DNA of 61,053 nt, the filler included, from Dugesia japonica (taxonomy: Eukaryota): assembly GCA_001938525.1 (NCBI GenBank). It is 6 parts of 6 records of this genome, joined end to end, with 100 filler letters (N's around TTAATTAATTAA, not from the genome) between each part and the next. Parts side by side here need not be neighbours in the genome. Positions count along the whole stretch, not along the records: positions 23,392 to 33,071 come from MQRL01612109.1; 5 more parts are not named here. One strand, 5' to 3'. The translations under genes and the position numbers were made by a program. The notes beneath the pieces are model-generated. The model was given only the letters and a program-made list of their open reading frames with translations. It was not told the DNA's origin and searched no databases. Of this stretch, positions 23,832 through 33,071 are shown piece by piece; within the stretch, counting starts at the first letter, position 1, and each line of letters begins with the position of its first letter.

Positions 23832-26092
23832 TTATTCTAATTTTATTCTTTTACAATTATTTGAATCTGGTTTTGCTAAATTTGATCGTTTTAATGAAAC
23901 AGTTTTGTTTACCTGATTAATTGGTGTTGTCGAATTTAATTTGTCTTTAATTNNNNNNNNNNNNNNNNNNNNNNNNNNNNNNNNNNNNNNNNNNNNNNNN
24001 NNNNNNNNNNNNNNNNNNNNNNNNNNNNNTTTATTTATTGCTTCTAACTTTTCTAAAATTGACAAATTCTGTCTTTGTTGAATTATATTTTCTGAATGAA
24101 TATTTCCATTATTTTTATCATATTCATTTAAAATATTTTGTTCATCTTTAGAAATCAAATCTTTTGGTATTTTGGATAATAATTGAATTATATGTTCTTT
24201 ATCACGAAACCAAGAAACAAGAGATCTTCGATTGACATTTAAATCTGATCCAATTTTACTTATTGATTCTCCATTTTCATATCTTTTTATTGCGTTTAAC
24301 TTTTGCCAAATTGAGATTTTCTGTTTCATTATTATTTTACAGGGATTATTATTTTCATCACCTTTAGTTTGATTTTTGTCTTCTCTTTTATCATTTGAAT
24401 CTTTGGACATTTTTGTTAATTTAATTAATTTTTCTTTATCATAAATCCAATTATGAATATTTGATTGGTGTACGTTTAAATCTAAACTAATATTTCTACA
24501 NNNNNNNNNNNNNNNNNNNNNNNNNNNNNNNNNNNNNNNNNNNNNNNNNNNNNNNNNNNNNNNNNNNNNNNNNNNNNNNNNNNNNNNNNNNNNNNNNNNN
24601 NNNNNNNNNNNNNNNNNNNNNNNNNNNNNNNNNNNNNNNNNNNNNNNNNNNNNNNNNNNNNNNNNNNNNNNNNNNNNNNNNNNNNNNNNNNNNNNNNNNN
24701 NNNNNNNNNNNNNNNNNNNNCTTACGTTTAAATCAAAACTAATTTTTTTACCTGATTCTCCATTTTCATATCTTTTCACTGCTTCTAACTTTTGTAAAAT
24801 TGACCAATTCTGTTTTTCTTTAATTATTTTTTCTGAATGAATATTTTCATTATTTTTATAATATTCATTTAAAATATCTTCTTCCTCTTTAGAAATTGAA
24901 TCTTTTGGAATATTTGATAATAATTTAATTANNNNNNNNNNNNNNNNNNNNNNNNNNNNNNNNNNNNNNNNNNNNNNNNNNAATATCTTCTTCCTCTTTA
25001 GAAATCAAATCTTTTGGCATTTTTGATAAAGATTCAATTAACGTTTCTTTATTATGATACCAATAAAAAATATTTGATTGGCTTACGTTTAAATCAAAAC
25101 TAATTTTTTTACCTGATTCTCCATTTTCATATCTTTTCACTGCTTCTAACTTTTGTAAAATTGACCAATTCTGTTTTTCTTTAATTATTTTTTCTGAATG
25201 AATATTTCCATTATTTTTATCATATTCATTTAAAATATCTTCTTCCTCTTTAGAAATTGAATCTTTTGGAATATTTGATAATAATTTAATTAATTTTTCT
25301 TTATCATGAAACCAACAAACAATAGTGTTTGGACTGGCATTTAAATCTAAACCAATTTTTCTACTTGATTCTCCATTTTCATATCTTTTTATTGCGTTGA
25401 ATTTTTGCAAAATTGAGAACTTCTGCGTTTGTTTTATTATTTTACTCTGATTACTTTGATCATTTTCATTTTGTTCTTTATCTTCTTTTTTATCATTTAA
25501 ATCTTTGGACATTTTTGTTAATTCAATTAATTTTTCTTTATCATAAAACCAATTATAAATATTCGTTTGGCTTACATTTAAATCTAAACTAATATTTTTA
25601 CATGATTCTCCATTTTCATATCTTTTTACTGCGTCTAACTTTTGCAAAATTGACAAATTCTGTCTTTGTTTAATTATNNNNNNNNNNNNNNNNNNNNNNN
25701 NNNNNNNNNNNNNNNNNNNNNNNNNNNNNNNNNNNNNNNNNNNNNNNNNNNNNNNNNNNNNNNNNNNNNNNNNNNNNNNNNNNNNNNNNNNNNNNNNNNN
25801 NNNNNNNNNNNNNNNNNNNNNNNNNNTAAAGTATATTTGGACTGCTTACATTTAAATCTAAGCCAATTTTTTTAAGTGATTCTCCATTTTCATATCTTTT
25901 TACTGCACTTAACTTTTGCAAATTTGAAATTTTTTTATTTTGTGTCATTATTTTATTTGGATTTTTATTCTTATCATCTTTATTTTGATCTTCATTATTA
26001 TTACAGTTTTCGATATCTTTTTCTGTAGCATTCAAATTCTTTGAAATTGTAGATAATTCAGCGAATGCTGAATTATTATTATTATTTTCCAT
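23832..26092 (-). CDS. Intronless tandem psq/CENP-B-type HTH repeat protein (about 8 modules visible, gaps inside)
   Basis: Repeated SILQKLxAVKRYENGESxxxIxxDLNVxxxxIxxWxxxKEKL modules at 79/84-aa spacing; ATG at 26092; ends KRIKLE*; no stops in the sequenced parts. Confidence 0.85.
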
Positions 26093-26504
26093 ATTTTCTA
26101 AATTTATATAATAATAATTTTTTTTATTAATAGAAAAATAATTAAATAAAATATATTTTTCTTGATTTTTATTGGATAATTATAAAAATATTATTTATTA
26201 TTGACATTTTATACTATTTTTATAAATTATTATGTAATTAAAATTAAATAAATGAAAGAAATAATCGTTAGAAACTCATTTTATTTGCGAATCAATATTT
26301 TCCAAATTTGCCATAAAAATATTATTAATAAAAAATAGTAAATAGATGTGAGCTCCGATTGTTTTATTAATTTTGGAGTTTTGACTGTTTTAGAAATGTG
26401 GCATTTGGATTGGTTGTAAAATTACGTAAAACAATATTTTGAATTCGCGTTGGAATGGTCAAATTTTGCTAGGGAATTACGAAAATTTGAATTTTGTTTA
26501 AAGG

Positions 26505-27569: not shown

Positions 27570-28750
27570 TATACACCTATCCCCCGATTTACACGGTAAC
27601 TTTTTTACACGATTTTGCTTTTACACTTTTTTAAAAAAATTATATCCCCCGATTTACATGGTACTTTTCGCTTTTACACGGTTNAAAAAAAACGATTAAA
27701 AAGTTATATTTGGATAAAAAACAGAANAAAAAATTTCCAAAAATGTATACACAACATAATGTTATTAGTTTTTACTTTTAACAGTAAATTTATTCATACA
27801 TACTGTTATTTGGTTCTAACACTGGCATTAAAAACTAAAAAAAAAGAATTCATCCATTCTGCATAAATTATTAAGAGATTGGACTTATTCTTGGCTTAGT
27901 GAGTTAAATTTATGTATTTAGTAGATGAAAAGTGCATACATATTATTGATTTCTTTATAATAATAAATTTTTAAAAATATTAAGCTATCGTAAATAATAA
28001 TTCATAATTTTTGTAGCAATTTTAAAATTCAGTATAAGCGTTTTATAGGCTTCATGATGTCGAAAGAAAAAAAAAACAAACAAGAAAAAAGAAAAGTAAT
28101 ATCGTTAGAAACTAAAATCAAAATAATAGATCGGCTGAGTAAAGGAGAAAGAGTTACAGAGGTGGCTAAATCATATTCTTTGAATGAAAGCTCGATTAGA
28201 AAAAGTGTAGCATCTGGAAGTGGTACAAGTTACAGCACAAAATCATATGTAAGGGATATTGTCATTGAAACTATGGAAAAGGCATTAATAATATGGATTG
28301 AAGACCAAACACAAAAGCGGATACCAATTGATACAAACGCAATCACAAATAAGGCGTTGTGGATATATGCAAAAGTTAAGGATCAGTTACCATCTACGTC
28401 TTTAGCTGAAAACCAAAAGCCGTCATTTTCAGCAAGCCACGGTTGGTTCGAAAGATTTAAAAAAAGGCATTCTTTGCATAATTTGAAATTGAAAGGCGAA
28501 CTATCATCAGGAGATATAAAAGTAGCAAAAGAATACCCAGCAAAGCTTGCTGAAATCATTGCCGCCAATTCATACACTCCAGATCAGATGTTTAATGCTG
28601 ACGAGTCCGGTCTTTTTTGGAAAAAAATGCCGAGAAGGATCTATGTGGCTAAATCTCACAAAACAGCTAGTGGCCATAAAGCAGCAAAAGACCGTATAAC
28701 AATTCTGTTTTGCAGCAACGCTTCAGGCGGTTACTTAATGAAACTATTCT
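27570..28750 (+). mobile_element. Tigger/pogo (TIGD1-like) DNA transposon, 5' part; transposase from 28054, truncated at ~28745
   Basis: psq HTH (KRKVISLETKIKIIDRLSKGE), CENP-B HTH (FSASHGWFERFKKR), DDE start (QMFNADESGLFWKKMP, KDRITILFCSNASG); TIR-like ATCCCCCGATTTACAC near 27580. Confidence 0.93.
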
Positions 28751-29370
28751 TGTTTCCCATTGGTGCCAGCTCTAAAATTCTAAAAATTTTTATGATTTTC
28801 GATCACATTATTGGTGTCTAATTTTAGAGCACCTTGTGATCTTCAGGGCTTTGTCTCATTTTAATTTTCTGGTTTCTCATTGGTTCATTATTCAAACCCT
28901 TTTAACGGACCTTCTGTTGTTGGTAGGATATTTTTGTTGGACAATCCTATTGCCCTGTCACTTTCTCCTTCCAGTTTTTCTTAATAGAATCTTTTATGAT
29001 CATTCCAGAGTGAAGATATCTTACAAAAACTGATTTTCTATTAATTATTCTTCTTTTTTGTAATAAATTAATTAATTTTTGATAATTAAATATTATTTTC
29101 TGACGATAATTCACTTGTTTTTCTAATAAATTATAATTTTCCTTAACTATTCCGATCGATTTCAGCTAATATTTTGTCCACCAAATATTTTCTTTTTGTC
29201 TATTGTATTTTTCTTCTAGCCTTTTTACCTTTTTTAATCGATATAATAATAGAACTTTTACTGAGATGAAACAGTTCTAGTTAATTTTCTTTTTTTAGCT
29301 CCCTTCATTAATATTTTCTGATTTCGGCCCTTGGGCCTAATTTTCTTCTGAAACCGGGCCTATTGTTTAT
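28745..29370 (-). mobile_element. Copy D (promoter-end fragment) of the cargo element family, interrupting the Tigger transposase
   Basis: 28755-29040 aligns with 2060-2340 (repeated ATTGG boxes, GATATCTTACAAAAACTGATTTT vs AATATTTACCGAAAACAGATTTT). Confidence 0.55.
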
Positions 29371-29389: not shown

Positions 29390-30507
29390 CCAGTTCTTTT
29401 TGATACAATATTGATGAGCTATGGGAATTTATACGGTAACTTTTCCATTGATTGTTGTGATTTGAAAACAGCCAACATGGCTGACAATAAACAGCATTTA
29501 AAGTTTTTGAATAACATAGCCAGAAATATGGAACTGGACCATACTTTAATTTAGCATAATAAACATTTTCTTTGAAACTTCGATTATTAGAGTCCTTAGG
29601 AAACAGTGCTTTTGGTCGGTATTGCGAACTACATACTATTTTGCGCTTTTCGTCATCAGATATAATTTGATTTAAATATTTACCTAAATCGTTATCATTG
29701 ATATTGTCGAGATTTTTTGAGCAGAACTGTTCAGTTACATTGTTGAGTTGGATGCTATTATCTATTTCATTTTCAACTACGGGCCTTATATTTTAATTTT
29801 TGGATATCTAAGCAACATCATTTTCATTTAAATTTTTAGACTGTTGAGTATTAAAGATCTAGACATTTTCTCTGTCTTTCTTCAGAAATGAATCCAATTT
29901 TGGTAATTGTTGTAGTAAAATCTCTTTTTCTTTCTTGATTTCACGCTTTTGAGCTCCACCTTTTACTTTTTTCAGAAGAATTCGGTTCAATTTTCATTAA
30001 CTTAAAGGTGAGAGTCAGAGGGTGACGGTAACTTGAAAATAAAAATTTTGAACACATTCGTTAACTATTACTAATTATAAATTTTTACCTTATTTAAAAA
30101 ATAAGTCTCATTCTTAACTGTGTAAAACAGAAAATTGAAGAGACTTTCAGAAATCATATAACATATTATTTATATGTTATAATTACTTTTTTGCGAATAA
30201 AAAAATATAATGTTGTATTGTATTGTTTTCTAGTAATATGCACTGCAGTGGAATAATAATTTCTACTCGTTTTATGTTTGTATTTCCTCTAAAGAAAAAC
30301 TTATCAGAGAAAAGTTTCTTATATATTTATTTTGTATTTGGATTGGTATGGATGGAAACATGGTGATTAAAAAAATAAGAACATTTTTTTACAAAAAATG
30401 TTTTTTAAAATTTAAAATTAGAAAATTAATTATTTTTTTTAATTTCATGGTTTGACGAATTGGCCCTTGTACCTCGCACACACTCGCCATACCTAGCTAC
30501 GGCACTG
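29390..30507 (-). mobile_element. hAT transposon 5' remnant (ZMYM1/TTF zinc-finger type)
   Basis: Minus-strand terminus CAGTGCCGTAGCTAGG at 30507; peptides GGAQKREIKKEKE and WLCYSKTLNAVYCQPCWLF. Confidence 0.75.
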
Positions 30508-31600
30508 CCCTAAATATTATCTTTTACAAAATATTTGAACTTTTAAAAACTGTTTAGAAACTGTTTTCTATAAACTTTATGAAGTTTATTTGCTAATACT
30601 ATTTGATCCTCAGATTGTTCTTCTAGTTTATATTCTTCACCACTAATTTTATCTTTATGAGCATGTTCAAGAATCTTTTTAATAGTAATGTATTACTTTG
30701 TCTTTCTAAATTTCCACCTTTCATTATTTTTCCTTTCATTGCAAATTTGTATATCTCCACCTCCACGCTTTAAATAAATTCGTTGATGTCTGAATTTATA
30801 ATTGTCAATTTTCAATAACAAAATTATACAAATAGTGGTGTATTTACGGTTAGAAACTGGGTATATACATTTATAAAATTTTATTCATTGGGTGCTTTGA
30901 GAGTATGATGAGCACTCTGGGAATCGCGAGGATGATGGGACCCTTTGGTATTCGAGATTTTTGATAGATCCTTCTGAGTTTTTACACTTTTATGATTTTA
31001 ACGACTTTTTTTTACATGCGTGGCACATTTTATACCTCGCTAGACTCCTAAATGTTAAGATGTATAATTTTGTTATTGAAAATAAACTGAAGAAATCGGA
31101 GATAAAAATAAATCAACATAAATGCTGGTTCTGAATATGCCAAATAAAGTTTTATGGTCATATTATAAATAAGGAAAGGATTAAAACTGATAATTCAAAT
31201 ATAGAGACAATAAACAAATTTGAAAATATCGATGTATCAAATATCTTTGTAACCTTATTGTTCTAACAAACTATTAATAGTCTTTTATTGCTGTTGTTAT
31301 TTATTTTTACATATTATTTGTATCATAAATACATTTTATTCATTCATAGAAGAAATATTTATTAATAATAATATTTGAATGACAAATTCTGAAAAACTTG
31401 ATTTTCTAATAAAATGAGTTTCTAACAATTATTTCTTTCATTTATTTAATTTTAGTTACATAAAAATTTTTAAAAATAGAACAAAATATAATTAATAAAT
31501 AATGTTTTTATAATTATCCAATACAATTCAAGAAAAATATATTTTATTAAATTTTTTTTCTATTAATTAAAATAATTATTATTAAATAAATTTAGAAAAT

Positions 31601-32894
31601 ATGGAAAATAATAANAAAAAATTAAATATTCAAGAAACAATAGATGAAGACAAAAATATCCAAATGAAATTTTCAATTTTTGAAAAGTTACAAGCAACAA
31701 AACAATATCAAAATGGAGAATCAAGTATAAAAATCGCCTGTGATTTGGATGACTATCAAAGAATTATTGTTAATGAGTTTCATGGTAAAAAAAATTAAGT
31801 TGAATTTTCACAAATCTCATAGAATTTGAATGCTAAAGAAGAAGAGATCGAAAACTATGATAATAATGAAGAACAAAATAAAGATAAGAATAATAATCCA
31901 AGTAAAATAATGACACAAAACGAAATAATCTCAATTTTGCAAAAGTTAAAGGCAGTAAAAAATTGGAAAATGAAAATGGAGAATCAAGTAAAAAAATTGG
32001 TTCTGATTTAAATGTAAGAAGTTTAAGTATATTTTATTGGTTTCATATCAAAGAAAAATTTATTAAATTATTAGTAAAAATGCCAAAAGATTTGATTTCT
32101 AAAGAGGGAGAAGATATTCTAAAGGAATATGATAAAAATATTAAAAATGTTCATTCACATAACATAATTAAACAAAAACAAAGATTGCCAATTTTGCAAA
32201 AGTTATCCGAAGTAAAAAGATTTGTAAATGGAGAATCAAGTAGAAATATTGGTTTAGATTTAAATGAAAGACGATCAAATATTTATAATTGGTTTGATAA
32301 TAAAGAAAAATTAATTCAATTAACAAAAATCCTAAAAGATTCAAGTGATAACAAAGAAGATAAAGAACAAAATGAAGATGATCAAAATTATCAAAGTAAA
32401 AATATAAAACAAATACAGCAATACTCAATTTTGCAAAAGTTAAACGCAATAAGAAGATATGAAAATGGAGAATCAAGTAGAATAATTGGTTTAGATATAA
32501 ATGCCAGTCTATTGTTTGTTGGTTTCATAATAAAGAAAAATTTATTAAATTATTATTAAATATGCCAAAAGTTTTGATTTCTAAAGAAGAAGATATTTTA
32601 AATGAATATGATAAAAATAAAAATATTTATTCACAAAAAACACCTAAACAAAACAAGAAATATTCACTATTGCAAAAGCTAAACGCTGTAAAAAGATATG
32701 AAAATGGAGAATCAATAACAAAAGTTTCTAATGAATTAAATATAGCACCGACAACAGTTCCATATTGTATCAGAATTAAAGACAAATTAGATTCGACAAC
32801 ACCAATTAATCAGATAAACAAAACTGTTTCATTAAAACGATCAAATTCAGCAGAACCAGATTCAAATAATTGTAAAAGAATNNNNNNAGAATAA
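31601..32894 (+). pseudogene. Second, frameshifted copy of the tandem psq-HTH repeat gene (about 5 modules)
   Basis: Same modules and C-terminus (IKDKLDSTTPINQINKTVSLKRSNSAEPDSNNCKR) split over four ORFs; 5' and 3' flanks (31410-31600, 32900-33050) are inverted homologs of 26100-26290 and 23590-23740. Confidence 0.85.
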
Positions 32895-33071
32895 ATCAAG
32901 TAATAATAGAAATAAATTTGATTTATTTTTACTTATACGAAGTAAAATGTTTGTAAAAGTGAAATCGTATTTAAATTTTTTCCTATTTTAAATAAACACA
33001 TTGAAGTGTTTAAAAATGAAATTAAAATGTTTAAATAACATATATAAACTCAGTGTTCTGTTTCCTCGGCC

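What the first reader, a model, noticed from the sequence alone, without database searches (positions are those of the whole stretch)
23832..26092. Tandem psq-HTH array protein with a hypervariable recognition helix: candidate modular DNA-binding system
Seen: an intronless ORF made only of ~80-aa modules. The scaffold (SILQKLxAVKRYENGES...I..DLN, W, KEKL) is nearly constant. The segment after DLN differs between modules: VSSPNIL, VSQTNIYNW, ASPNTIVCW, VSQSNIFYW, VHQSNIHNW, VNRRSLVSW, and in copy 2 VRSLSIFYW, ERRSNIYNW, IAPTTVPYC. No DDE domain is visible, and the protein ends in an NLS-like KRIKLE. Known: this fold is the psq/CENP-B N-terminal HTH of pogo/Tigger transposases, whose third helix reads DNA. 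Inference: a domesticated, repeat-expanded array with diversified specificity, analogous to ZNF or TALE arrays, perhaps for TE surveillance or repeat binding.
Basis: partly seen in the sequence, partly recalled or inferred. Interest (0 to 1): 0.88.

Follow-up and report, generated by a model that had tools for sequence, protein, structure and literature searches.

The report
Transposase-derived tandem HTH array gene
This is a real intronless gene made of at least five repeated DNA-binding helix-turn-helix modules borrowed from a pogo/Tigger transposase, with no cutting domain. It belongs to a fast-changing multi-copy family, but its exact length, its expression and any modular DNA code remain unproven.

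Summary
The gene lies on the minus strand, 26092 to 23832, in five pieces separated by assembly gaps. Each piece has exactly one stop-free frame, although stops are expected at about 0.107 per codon. The pieces encode about 80-aa units that match Pfam CENP-B_N (E 2e-21), not the HTH_psq model. A module folds with pLDDT 88.9 as a three-helix HTH closest to fly Dan, CENP-B and Brinker. No Tc5 or DDE domain is present, and no gap is large enough to hide one.

The module count is uncertain, from at least 5 to about 9. Piece C is a 99% duplicate of part of B, D is an 85% paralogue of B, and two gaps are unsized.

Amino-acid replacement is densest on one face of helix 3. The linkers vary almost as much, and overall dN/dS is about 1. 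Even so, a neutral simulation shows that the open frame has been kept by selection.

The gene is one of many genomic copies. A copy lying in inverted orientation about 5 kb away (31356-33048) is a pseudogene. Relatives share the start, the C-terminal tail and a CCAAT-containing upstream region, and two relatives sit on self-closing 1.8 and 2.9 kb units.

Two poly(A) RNA runs gave no support for transcription. Verdict: a new variant of pogo-derived psq/CENP-B-type DNA-binding proteins. A TALE-like code is unproven.

The parts
25827..26092 (-). Piece A: start codon (MENN..., conserved in relatives), Asn/Lys-rich N-terminus, and module M1 up to ...DLNVSSPNIL, cut off by a 149-N gap
   Evidence: Single open frame. 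CENP-B_N partial hit. 83% DNA identity to copy 2 at 31801-32036. The MENN start is shared with P0001 and copy 2.
24982..25677 (-). Piece B: end of linker L2, then M2 - L1 - M3 - L2 - M4 - start of the next L2. This is the only stretch with three complete modules.
   Evidence: 232 codons with no stop. CENP-B_N E 2.3e-21 in 3 stretches. TRF period 252 bp. The M2 model has pLDDT 88.9.
24721..24931 (-). Piece C: linker L2 plus the first half of a module. It is a 99% duplicate of 25084-25293, so it is either a very recent internal duplication or a redundant or paralogous contig placed by the scaffolder.
   Evidence: 2 mismatches in 211 bp against piece B. Both mismatches change an amino acid.
24030..24500 (-). 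Piece D: end of M6 - L1 - M7 - L2 - start of M8. It is an 85% DNA paralogue of M2-L1-M3-L2-M4 in piece B.
   Evidence: CENP-B_N E 5e-6.
23832..23952 (-). Piece E: C-terminal tail IKDKLNSTTPINQVNKTVSLKRSNLAKPDSNNCKRIKLE plus the stop codon. KR-x11-KRIK fits a bipartite NLS pattern, and IKLE fits the psi-K-x-E SUMO consensus.
   Evidence: 92% DNA identity to copy 2, with dN 0.049 and no synonymous change. The tail is conserved in P0002. It has the highest summed word depth in the DNA runs.
26093..26337 (-). Conserved upstream region of the repeat unit, including an invariant ATTAYCCAAT (CCAAT at 26175-26171, about 83 nt before the ATG)
   Evidence: 88% identity to copy 2 at 31356-31620. 72-76% identity to the upstream regions of L001 and L002, with CC invariant in four sequences.
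23587..23831 (-). Downstream flank shared with copy 2. It contains a 50-N gap (23780-23829) flanked by a 46-bp artefactual duplication.
   Evidence: 32851-33048 aligns to 23779-23587, and 32774-32896 aligns to 23952-23830, overlapping by 46 bp.
31356..33048 (+). Copy 2: an inverted paralogous unit that is a pseudogene. Its order is M0'-M1'-L2-M2'-L1-M3'-L2-M4'-tail, with two in-frame stops (about 31796 and 31820) and two frameshifts (in M1', and a 7-bp deletion in helix 3 of M3').
   Evidence: ORF frames are 2, 2, 1, 0 for 31601, 31826, 31963 and 32562. Collinear blastn identity to copy 1 is 83-92%.
28012..28788 (+). Truncated Tigger/pogo transposase remnant (CENP-B_N, HTH_Tnp_Tc5 and the start of DDE) lying between the two copies. 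It is not the recent source of the array modules.
   Evidence: HTH_Tnp_Tc5 E 3e-15. Only the first ~250 residues of full-length Tiggers align. The nearest named relatives are pseudoscorpion, spider and insect Tiggers. Its HTH1 aligns in register with the modules at 16% identity.

Best explanation
The locus is a real, intronless, DDE-less gene of a lineage-specific multi-copy family. Its product is a chain of at least 5, and as scaffolded about 8-9, three-helix HTH modules of the CENP-B N-terminal/psq class, the first DNA-binding domain of pogo/Tigger transposases.

The modules are joined by two alternating linkers of 33-38 aa. L1 is polar and low in complexity. L2 carries a conserved acidic ISKEEEDILNEY motif. 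The protein ends in a basic tail.

Inferred mechanism:
- The tail's bipartite KR-x11-KRIK motif takes the protein into the nucleus.
- Each mildly basic module places helix 3 in a major groove, as CENP-B and Brinker do.
- Several modules on flexible linkers bind clustered or repeated short sites. By my recollection, this is how the four psq repeats of Drosophila Pipsqueak bind GA repeats.

The array grows and shrinks by unequal exchange between modules. Paralogues differ mostly on the exposed face of helix 3 and in the linkers, so different copies probably prefer different DNA.

Shown here: gene structure, fold class, absence of catalytic domains, family membership, selection for an open frame, and the location of variability. 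Inferred only: DNA binding, nuclear import, target type and expression.
For: - **Open frames.** Every piece is open from edge to edge in one frame, against 0.107 stops per codon expected.
- **Selection on the frame.** B and D differ at 76 of 471 nt, yet neither has a stop. 99.8% of simulated neutral descendants acquire one.
- **Domain and fold.** CENP-B_N E 2.3e-21. AF2 module pLDDT 88.9 with helices at 8-19, 24-31 and 35-43. Foldseek gives 2elh TMq 0.73, 1hlv TMq 0.77 with rmsd 1.9, and 2glo. The PDB profile search puts 2elh on top at E 7e-6.
- **No catalytic parts.** No Tc5 or DDE hit.
- **Relatives.** P0001 (E 2e-41, 4-5 modules) and P0002 share the MENN start, the CKKIKLE tail and a CCAAT-containing upstream region.
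- **Location of variability.** Replacement in the helix-3 window is pN 0.32, against 0.10 in the scaffold (Fisher p 0.0013). It is higher in 7 of 7 module pairs. Across 28 family modules the entropy peaks fall at helix-3 positions 35, 36, 39 and 40, which form one helical face.
- **Charge.** Modules carry net +1 to +5 and the tail +6.
- **Precedent.** DDE-less pogo-derived DNA-binding proteins and lineage-specific HTH-psq/CENPB expansions are documented (PMC4231638, PMC10027918).
Against: - No transcription was seen in two oligo-dT RNA-seq runs: 2 and 4 partially fitting reads.
- Whole-gene dN/dS is about 1, and scaffold dN/dS is about 0.8. That looks like weak constraint.
- The neighbouring copy is a pseudogene.
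- The L1 linker is as variable as helix 3, and the helix-3 versus linker contrast is not significant (p 0.07).
- A variable recognition face could equally mean that base-specific binding is not under selection.
- The module count rests on a gapped short-read scaffold inside a multi-copy family.
- The three-module model without an alignment was poor, with pLDDT 44.5.
Confidence: 0.55

Rival explanations
1. The ORF belongs to a selfishly amplifying DNA unit: a mobile element of unrecognised type, or a tandemly or circularly amplified 'ampliconic' unit. The HTH array would then bind the unit's own DNA, or act in a genetic conflict, rather than serve as a host regulator.
For: - DNA-run unitigs pile up to a summed word depth roughly 10-20 times that of the flanks over the tail and module cores. 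About 200-260 unitigs were laid on 2.4 kb, which suggests many near-identical copies.
- The repeat unit carries its own conserved upstream and downstream flanks. The upstream flank is conserved in relatives that share only about 45% amino-acid identity.
- The closest relative sits on a unit that closes on itself with a period of about 1833 bp in two independent assemblies. P0005 sits on a contig whose 141-bp ends are identical, giving a period of 2944 bp. Each unit holds only the array gene.
- dN/dS is about 1, a dead copy lies next door, and the neighbourhood is rich in TE debris.
Against: - No terminal inverted repeats, no target-site duplication and no catalytic ORF were found in the window or in L001, L002 or L047.
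- The 3' boundary of the unit lies beyond the end of the piece, so the unit's ends could not be defined.
- Summed contig depth is not a copy number.
- Self-closing contigs may reflect ordinary tandem gene clusters.
Confidence: 0.22
2. The locus is a decaying relic whose apparent length is an assembly artefact. Contigs from several paralogues or haplotypes of a 4-5 module gene were scaffolded into a false long array, and the family is drifting neutrally with no current function.
For: - Piece C is 99% identical to part of B, and D is an 85% paralogue of B.
- The two 50-N gaps have overlapping ends, and one (23780-23829) is demonstrably a 46-bp false duplication.
- Copy 2 has only 5 modules and is a pseudogene.
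- dN/dS is about 1, and there is no RNA support.
Against: - B alone shows M4 followed by another L2, so at least 5 modules are required even without C and D.
- The sized gaps match one-module continuity.
- B and D both remain stop-free despite 16% divergence (p about 0.002 under neutrality).
- The tail and the L2 motif are strongly conserved.
Confidence: 0.15
3. The modules no longer read DNA. The array would be a protein- or RNA-binding repeat scaffold, and the helix-3 face varies simply because it is solvent-exposed and unconstrained.
For: - The recognition face is the least conserved part of the module across the family.
- Net charge per module is only +1 to +5.
- The conserved acidic L2 motif suggests that partner binding matters.
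Against: - The fold and the conserved core residues are those of DNA-bound relatives such as 1hlv and 2glo.
- The invariant W41, K45 and T/N37 in helix 3 are retained.
- The variability follows an i, i+1, i+4, i+5 pattern on the face that contacts DNA in homologues, which is typical of paralogues with different targets.
Confidence: 0.08

Closest known systems
Drosophila Pipsqueak (Psq) DNA-binding region. That it has four tandem psq HTH repeats binding GA-rich DNA is from my own knowledge of Lehmann et al. 1998 and Siegmund & Lehmann 2002; the latter is cited in PMC10027918 and PMC5026256.
   Same: It has tandem copies of the same pogo-related HTH class within one polypeptide, and no transposase catalytic domain. 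Multi-site DNA binding is the probable mode of action.
   Different: - Psq repeats are about 50 aa and directly adjacent. Here the period is 79/84 aa with two alternating conserved linkers.
- Psq has 4 repeats plus an N-terminal BTB domain and is a single-copy, conserved developmental gene.
- This gene has at least 5 to about 9 modules and no BTB domain, and it is intronless, multi-copy and fast-evolving.
- The Pfam HTH_psq model gave no hit; CENP-B_N did.
Pogo-derived CENP-B-related proteins (CENP-B, S. pombe Abp1/Cbh1/Cbh2, Drosophila CAG, TIGD/JRK) (PMC4231638)
   Same: The CENP-B_N HTH is the building block, and 1hlv is a structural match (TMq 0.77). A DDE-less derivative has a precedent in CAG. 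According to a reference listed in PMC4231638 (Cam et al. 2008), the fission-yeast members survey retrotransposons.
   Different: Those proteins carry one CENP-B_N domain plus one HTH_Tnp_Tc5 domain, usually with a DDE remnant. Here only the first HTH is present, and it is repeated many times. No Tc5 domain is found.
Lineage-specific expansions of TE-derived HTH-psq/CENPB transcription factors in metazoans (PMC10027918)
   Same: These are species-restricted multi-copy families of pogo-derived HTH proteins without one-to-one orthologues.
   Different: That survey describes expansion in gene number, not repeat arrays within a gene, alternating linkers, or self-closing gene units.
Unannotated multi-HTH proteins found here: L046 (7 modules plus 2 HTH_Tnp_Tc5, no DDE), P0005/P0008/P0009 (4-6 modules), and bacterial-looking arrays P0004/P0006/P0024/P0021
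   Same: They carry tandem arrays of 4-8 modules of the same HTH class, with variable helix 3.
   Different: Only P0001 and P0002 share the start, linkers, tail and upstream region with the window gene. The others are distant (23-35% identity) or prokaryotic in context.
TALE and C2H2 zinc-finger arrays
   Same: These have repeated modules with a constant scaffold and variable positions on the DNA-facing element. This is an analogy only.
   Different: There is no evidence here of a fixed number of base pairs per module or of a residue-to-base code. The scaffold is only 55-85% identical between modules, and the linkers are long and variable.

Membership tests
CENP-B N-terminal / psq-type HTH domain (Pfam PF04218, HTH clan) | Sequence match to the family profile above the curated cut-off | tested here: met
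   Piece B scores 75.6 bits against a cut-off of 21.2, E 2.3e-21, in 3 stretches. D scores 26.5 bits, and copy 2 scores 32.9 bits. HTH_psq PF05225 and BrkDBD gave no hit at E<=1.
CENP-B N-terminal / psq-type HTH domain (Pfam PF04218, HTH clan) | Three-helix helix-turn-helix fold, with the third helix acting as the recognition helix | tested here: met
   AF2 with a 28-module alignment gives pLDDT 88.9 and helices at 8-19, 24-31 and 35-43. Foldseek gives 2elh prob 1.0, 1hlv TMq 0.77 and 2glo TMq 0.68. The E-values are weak (>=0.04) because the domain has only 52 aa.
CENP-B N-terminal / psq-type HTH domain (Pfam PF04218, HTH clan) | Sequence-specific DNA binding | not testable with these tools
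   Inferred from homology only.
Autonomous pogo/Tigger transposon | Second HTH (HTH_Tnp_Tc5) and a DDE_1 catalytic domain in the same ORF | tested here: not met
   Neither domain is found in any of the five pieces. The gaps (77-220 N) are too short for a DDE domain. The only Tc5/DDE signal in the piece is the separate truncated remnant at 28012-28788.
Autonomous pogo/Tigger transposon | Terminal inverted repeats with a TA target-site duplication at the ends of the unit | tested here: inconclusive
   No inverted repeat links the 5' boundary (about 26337) to the downstream flank, and none is found in L001, L002 or L047. However, the 3' boundary of the unit lies beyond the end of the piece.
Pipsqueak family (BTB-psq group) | Tandem psq repeats | tested here: met
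   At least three complete modules are contiguous in piece B.
Pipsqueak family (BTB-psq group) | N-terminal BTB/POZ domain | tested here: not met
   Piece A starts at a conserved ATG and has no BTB hit. Relatives P0001 and P0002 also lack BTB.
Modular DNA-code arrays (TALE/ZNF-like) | Variation confined to a few fixed specificity positions on an otherwise constant module | tested here: inconclusive
   Entropy peaks fall at helix-3 positions 35, 36, 39 and 40, and pN is 3 times higher than in the scaffold. But surface positions of H1 and H2 and the linkers reach similar entropy. The sample is small and the pairs are not independent.
Modular DNA-code arrays (TALE/ZNF-like) | One module reads a fixed number of bases, with a residue-to-base code | not testable with these tools
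   This needs SELEX, PBM or structures.
Expressed host gene | Transcript evidence | tested here: not met
   Runs X14 and X17 (oligo-dT, about 1.9 and 1.7 Gb read) gave 2 and 4 reads, all fitting only partly. Tissue and stage are unknown, so this is weak negative evidence.

The most novel reading that the evidence does not exclude
The family is an ampliconic, rapidly diversifying set of programmable multi-HTH arrays. Each module would read a short DNA word through four variable helix-3 positions (35, 36, 39 and 40 of the module). Module shuffling by unequal exchange would create new long recognition sites. The genes would be amplified on tandem or circular 2-3 kb units as part of a genetic conflict with repeats or transposons, or as a selfish element in their own right. 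That would make it a natural HTH counterpart of KRAB-ZNF or TALE arrays.
Probability: 0.12. Interest if true: 0.85.

Novelty: new variant of a known kind. Interest (0 to 1): 0.5.

Why it matters
Domesticated pogo DNA-binding domains are known as single domains (CENP-B, CAG, TIGD) or as the four-repeat Psq domain. A family that multiplies this HTH into long arrays would be a second natural route, besides zinc fingers and TALEs, to long and evolvable DNA recognition. The distinguishing features here are the alternating conserved linkers, a conserved nuclear-targeting tail, its own promoter-like element, many genomic copies, and replacements focused on the recognition face.

If binding specificity tracks the helix-3 residues, the modules could be a compact engineering scaffold. 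They could also open a window on conflicts between host and repeats. If not, the locus is still a clear example of how transposase domains are recycled into fast-evolving gene families, and of how short-read scaffolds distort such arrays.

Tried and rejected
- **Straight translation.** Translating 23832-26092 in one pass breaks frame at the gaps, so I analysed the pieces separately.
- **Gaps.** I did not fill any N gap. The loose-end letters that read laying printed next to the gaps were not used.
- **Metagenome scan.** With A3 it returned 42 loci, all single-HTH, mostly 30-55% GC, prokaryote-like IS OrfA hits and not family members.
- **Three-module structure.** Prediction for piece B without an alignment gave pLDDT 44.5 and was not usable.
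- **PDB hit 8vd6.** The 'CAP REPEAT' entry turned out to be a de novo designed protein (PMC12339374) and is irrelevant.
- **Weak representative hits.** P0016 (a bee 'jerky/tigger' protein) is two fused Tigger transposases, not an array. P0042 is an Ig-domain false positive.
- **Terminal inverted repeats.** The search found only AT-rich noise.
- **Other scans.** Rfam and tRNA scans of the piece were empty. The other small ORFs in the spacer have no Pfam domain.
- **Host identity.** Run names are coded. Atlas and cluster look-ups gave no taxon for the family. Only the Tigger remnant points to an arthropod, probably arachnid-like or insect-like, TE lineage, and that could also reflect horizontal transfer.
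- **Neighbouring Tigger as source.** It is not the recent source of the modules: 16% identity, hhalign E 3e-4.
Full report
**1. What is in the sequence**

The feature lies on the minus strand. Between the ATG at 26092 and the stop at 23832 there are four N runs: 25678-25826, 24932-24981, 24501-24720 and 23953-24029. A straight translation breaks frame at the gaps.

Each of the five sequenced pieces has exactly one frame with no stop from edge to edge, while the other frames hold 1-34 stops. The pieces are:
- A, 25827-26092
- B, 24982-25677
- C, 24721-24931
- D, 24030-24500
- E, 23830-23952

The coding strand is 50% A and 28% T. Chance would give 0.107 stops per codon, so P(no stop in 586 codons) is about 2e-29. 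The coding signal is therefore real.

With the N counts as written, gaps C-D and D-E are in phase: the ORF listing reads 23832-24779 as one ORF. Gaps A-B and B-C are not in phase. Gap lengths are estimates, so phase says little. Compared with the uninterrupted copy 2:
- The A-B gap (149 N) should hold about 129 nt.
- The D-E gap (77 N) should hold about 81 nt.
- The C-D gap (220 N) should hold about one period, roughly 240 nt.

Three gaps therefore fit simple continuity. The 50-N gap B-C is a placeholder with overlapping ends. So is the 50-N gap at 23780-23829 in the 3' flank, which is flanked by a 46-bp false duplication. I did not fill any gap.

**2. Anatomy**

The protein reads:
M(ENN...) - M1 - [gap] - L2 - M2 - L1 - M3 - L2 - M4 - L2... 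[gap] ...L2 - M5... [gap] ...M6 - L1 - M7 - L2 - M8... [gap] - tail.

- Modules are about 45 aa: SILQKLxAVKRYENGESxKxIxxDLNVxxxxIxxWxxDKEKLI.
- Two linker types alternate. L1 is about 34 aa, polar and low in complexity. L2 is about 38 aa and carries a strongly conserved PKDxISKEEEDILNEYDKNNGNIHSE.
- The periods are therefore 79 and 84 aa. TRF reports 252 bp, 2.8 copies and 79% matches in piece B.

Piece C differs from 25084-25293 at only 2 of 211 nt. Piece D is an 85% DNA paralogue of M2-L1-M3-L2-M4. Piece B alone shows that M4 is followed by another L2, so at least five modules are certain. The figure of eight to nine depends on the scaffold.

**3. Domain and fold**

- Pfam assigns the modules to CENP-B_N (PF04218): piece B gives E 2.3e-21 in three stretches. 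There is no HTH_psq, BrkDBD, HTH_Tnp_Tc5 or DDE_1 hit in any piece.
- No gap is long enough to hide a DDE domain.
- A 28-module alignment (A1) gave an AF2 model with pLDDT 88.9 and helices at 8-19, 24-31 and 35-43.
- Its best structural matches are the psq/CENP-B_N domain of fly Dan (2elh, TMq 0.73), CENP-B on DNA (1hlv, TMq 0.77, rmsd 1.9 Å) and Brinker on DNA (2glo). E-values are weak because the domain is tiny.
- The profile search of PDB sequences also puts 2elh first, at E 7e-6.

**4. Is helix 3 hypervariable?**

The variable stretch (V33 to N40 of the module) is the turn plus the first six residues of helix 3.

- Within the window, entropy is 1.8-2.7 bits at +13 to +20 (I at +18 is conserved), against about 0-1.3 in most of H1, NGES and IxxDLN. 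Single surface positions of H1 and H2 and the residues before the module reach 2.0-2.4 bits as well.
- Across 28 modules of the wider family, the highest entropies fall at positions 35 (3.33), 39 (3.24), 36 (2.92) and 40 (2.68). These form one helical face. I38, W41 and K45 are nearly fixed.
- Codon counts for B against D:

| Region | pN | pS |
|---|---|---|
| Helix-3 window | 0.32 | 0.09 |
| Scaffold | 0.10 | 0.12 |
| Linkers | 0.18 | 0.21 |
| Whole alignment | 0.162 | 0.158 (dN/dS 1.03) |

- Fisher tests give p 0.0013 for helix 3 against scaffold, and p 0.07 for helix 3 against linkers.
- The most changed 8-residue windows are helix 3 of M3/M7 (7 of 8) and, equally, part of L1.
- In seven module pairs, pN in the helix-3 window always exceeds pN in the scaffold, and exceeds overall pS in six. 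The counts are tiny and the pairs are not independent.

Replacement is concentrated on the DNA-facing side of helix 3, but not uniquely there. Positive selection is suggested, not shown.

**5. Is the gene alive?**

B and D differ at 76 of 471 aligned nt, with only in-frame length changes, and neither has a stop. In 5000 simulations of 76 composition-weighted substitutions, 99.8% produced a stop. The open frame has therefore been maintained by selection, or homogenised by gene conversion, despite dN/dS near 1.

The tail is the best conserved part: 92% DNA identity to copy 2, 4 nonsynonymous and 0 synonymous changes in 35 codons.

By contrast, copy 2 (31356-33048, plus strand, head-to-head with copy 1 across a 5-kb spacer) has two in-frame stops and two frameshifts. 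It keeps an extra N-terminal module, M0', which relative P0001 also has and copy 1 has lost.

Two oligo-dT RNA-seq runs of the same species label (about 1.9 and 1.7 Gb read) gave 2 and 4 reads, all fitting only partly. Transcription is unsupported, although tissues and stages are unknown.

**6. Family and context**

- **Copy number.** In two DNA runs from different studies the region is covered only by unitigs of about 100 bp. About 200-260 were laid, half of them at 95-99% identity. Summed word depth is about 230-460 over the tail and module cores, against 10-30 in the flanks. This is the signature of many near-identical copies, though it is not a copy number.
- **Shared flanks.** The unit shared by copies 1 and 2 extends 245 bp upstream and at least 245 bp downstream of the ORF.
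- **Database relatives.** Only a handful of unnamed metagenome or SRA proteins are close:
  - P0001: 317 aa, E 2e-41, 42-48% identity.
  - P0002: 276 aa, same tail ...KRSN-x-CKKIKLE.
  - More distant 4-6 module proteins: P0005, P0008, P0009 and P0003.
- **Conserved upstream region.** About 180 bp upstream of the ATG is 72-76% identical between the window copies and L001/L002. It includes an invariant ATTAYCCAAT about 83 nt before the ATG.
- **No transposon hallmarks.** No terminal inverted repeats or catalytic ORF accompany any copy.
- **Self-closing units.** The P0001 gene lies on a unit that closes on itself with a period of about 1833 bp in two independent assemblies (L001, L051). P0005 lies on a contig whose 141-bp ends are identical, giving a period of 2944 bp. 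Each unit holds only the array gene. These are tandem head-to-tail gene units or circles.
- **Arrays elsewhere.** L046 encodes seven modules followed by two HTH_Tnp_Tc5 domains and no DDE. Bacterial-looking arrays also exist (P0004, P0006, P0024, and P0021 in a prokaryotic gene context).
- **The spacer.** It holds a truncated Tigger covering the first ~250 aa only. Its nearest named relatives are pseudoscorpion, spider and insect Tiggers. Its own HTH1 is only 16% identical to the modules.

**7. Most likely mechanism**

Shown:
- a DDE-less chain of psq/CENP-B_N HTH domains with conserved linkers and a basic tail;
- membership of a multi-copy, fast-evolving family;
- an open frame under selection.

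Inferred:
- The tail's KR-x11-KRIK fits a classical bipartite NLS, and IKLE fits the psi-K-x-E SUMO consensus. Related tails in P0003 and P0008 carry IKLE and (I/V)KKE.
- The modules are mildly basic and the linkers acidic.
- Each module would insert helix 3 into the major groove as in 1hlv and 2glo. Several modules on flexible linkers would bind clustered short sites. By my recollection, this is how the Psq four-repeat domain binds.
- Paralogues that differ on the helix-3 face would prefer different sites.
- Unequal exchange between modules explains the 163-aa higher-order period, the B/D duplication and the variable module numbers among relatives.

**8. Comparison with known systems**

This gene works like Psq in having tandem psq-type HTHs. 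It is built from the same domain as the pogo-derived CENP-B-related proteins, including the DDE-less CAG (PMC4231638). It also fits the pattern of lineage-specific expansions of TE-derived HTH-psq/CENPB factors (PMC10027918).

It differs in five ways:
- module number
- the long alternating conserved linkers
- the absence of BTB and Tc5 domains
- the intronless, multi-copy, self-flanked unit
- relatives on self-closing units

It is not a pogo transposase, because the Tc5 and DDE features were tested and not met. It is not a BTB-psq protein. A TALE/ZNF-like code is an analogy without evidence.

**9. Verdict**

This is a new variant of a known kind, of moderate interest. Interest would rise considerably if long reads, expression data and binding assays confirmed a diversifying modular DNA reader, or a selfish amplified unit.

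Noticed in passing
window 23780-23829 and flanks 23734-23779 / 23830-23875: The 50-N gap is flanked by the same 46 bp on both sides, and copy 2 reads straight through this stretch. It is a scaffolding artefact in which overlapping contig ends were not merged.
   Followed up: yes
L001:1-2030 and L051:1-1855: The closest relative (the P0001 gene) lies on a unit that closes on itself with a period of about 1833 bp in two independent assemblies. In L001 the two ends are 97% identical. The unit is a tandem head-to-tail repeat or a circle and holds only the array gene.
   Followed up: partly
L047:1-3085: The first and last 141 bp of the contig are identical, giving a period of 2944 bp. The only ORF is a 367-aa protein with six HTH modules (P0005).
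   Followed up: partly
L046:1583-4162: Three adjacent exon-like ORFs encode seven CENP-B_N-type modules followed by two HTH_Tnp_Tc5-like domains and no DDE. This is another DDE-less multi-HTH architecture in an unidentified eukaryote.
   Followed up: partly
L045:10001-11505: Two adjacent genes encode multi-HTH (HTH_Tnp_1/CENP-B_N-like) arrays in a clearly prokaryotic, IS-rich context (MltA, TGT and queuosine synthesis genes). Proteins P0004 and P0006 are 8-repeat arrays of the same kind.
   Followed up: no
window 27579-27598 and 27644-27663: A 20-nt C-rich motif, ATCCCCCGATTTACAYGGTA, occurs twice, 65 bp apart, in very AT-rich DNA. Zero matches are expected by chance. Its nature is unknown; it may be a small repeat element.
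   Followed up: partly
window 30455-30510: There is a short GC-rich island (..GGCCCTTGTACCTCGCACACACTCGCCATACCTAGCTACGGCACTGCCC..) in a spacer of about 25% GC. It gave no tRNA or Rfam match.
   Followed up: partly
window 28012-28788: A truncated Tigger/pogo transposase remnant lies here (CENP-B_N, HTH_Tnp_Tc5 and the start of DDE). Its closest named relatives are Tigger copies from a pseudoscorpion, spiders and insects, at up to 63% identity. Unnamed SRA contigs reach 84%.
   Followed up: yes
window 25084-25293 vs 24721-24931: Both differences between the 99% duplicates change an amino acid in the conserved L2 motif: NEYDKNNGN against NEYYKNNEN.
   Followed up: no
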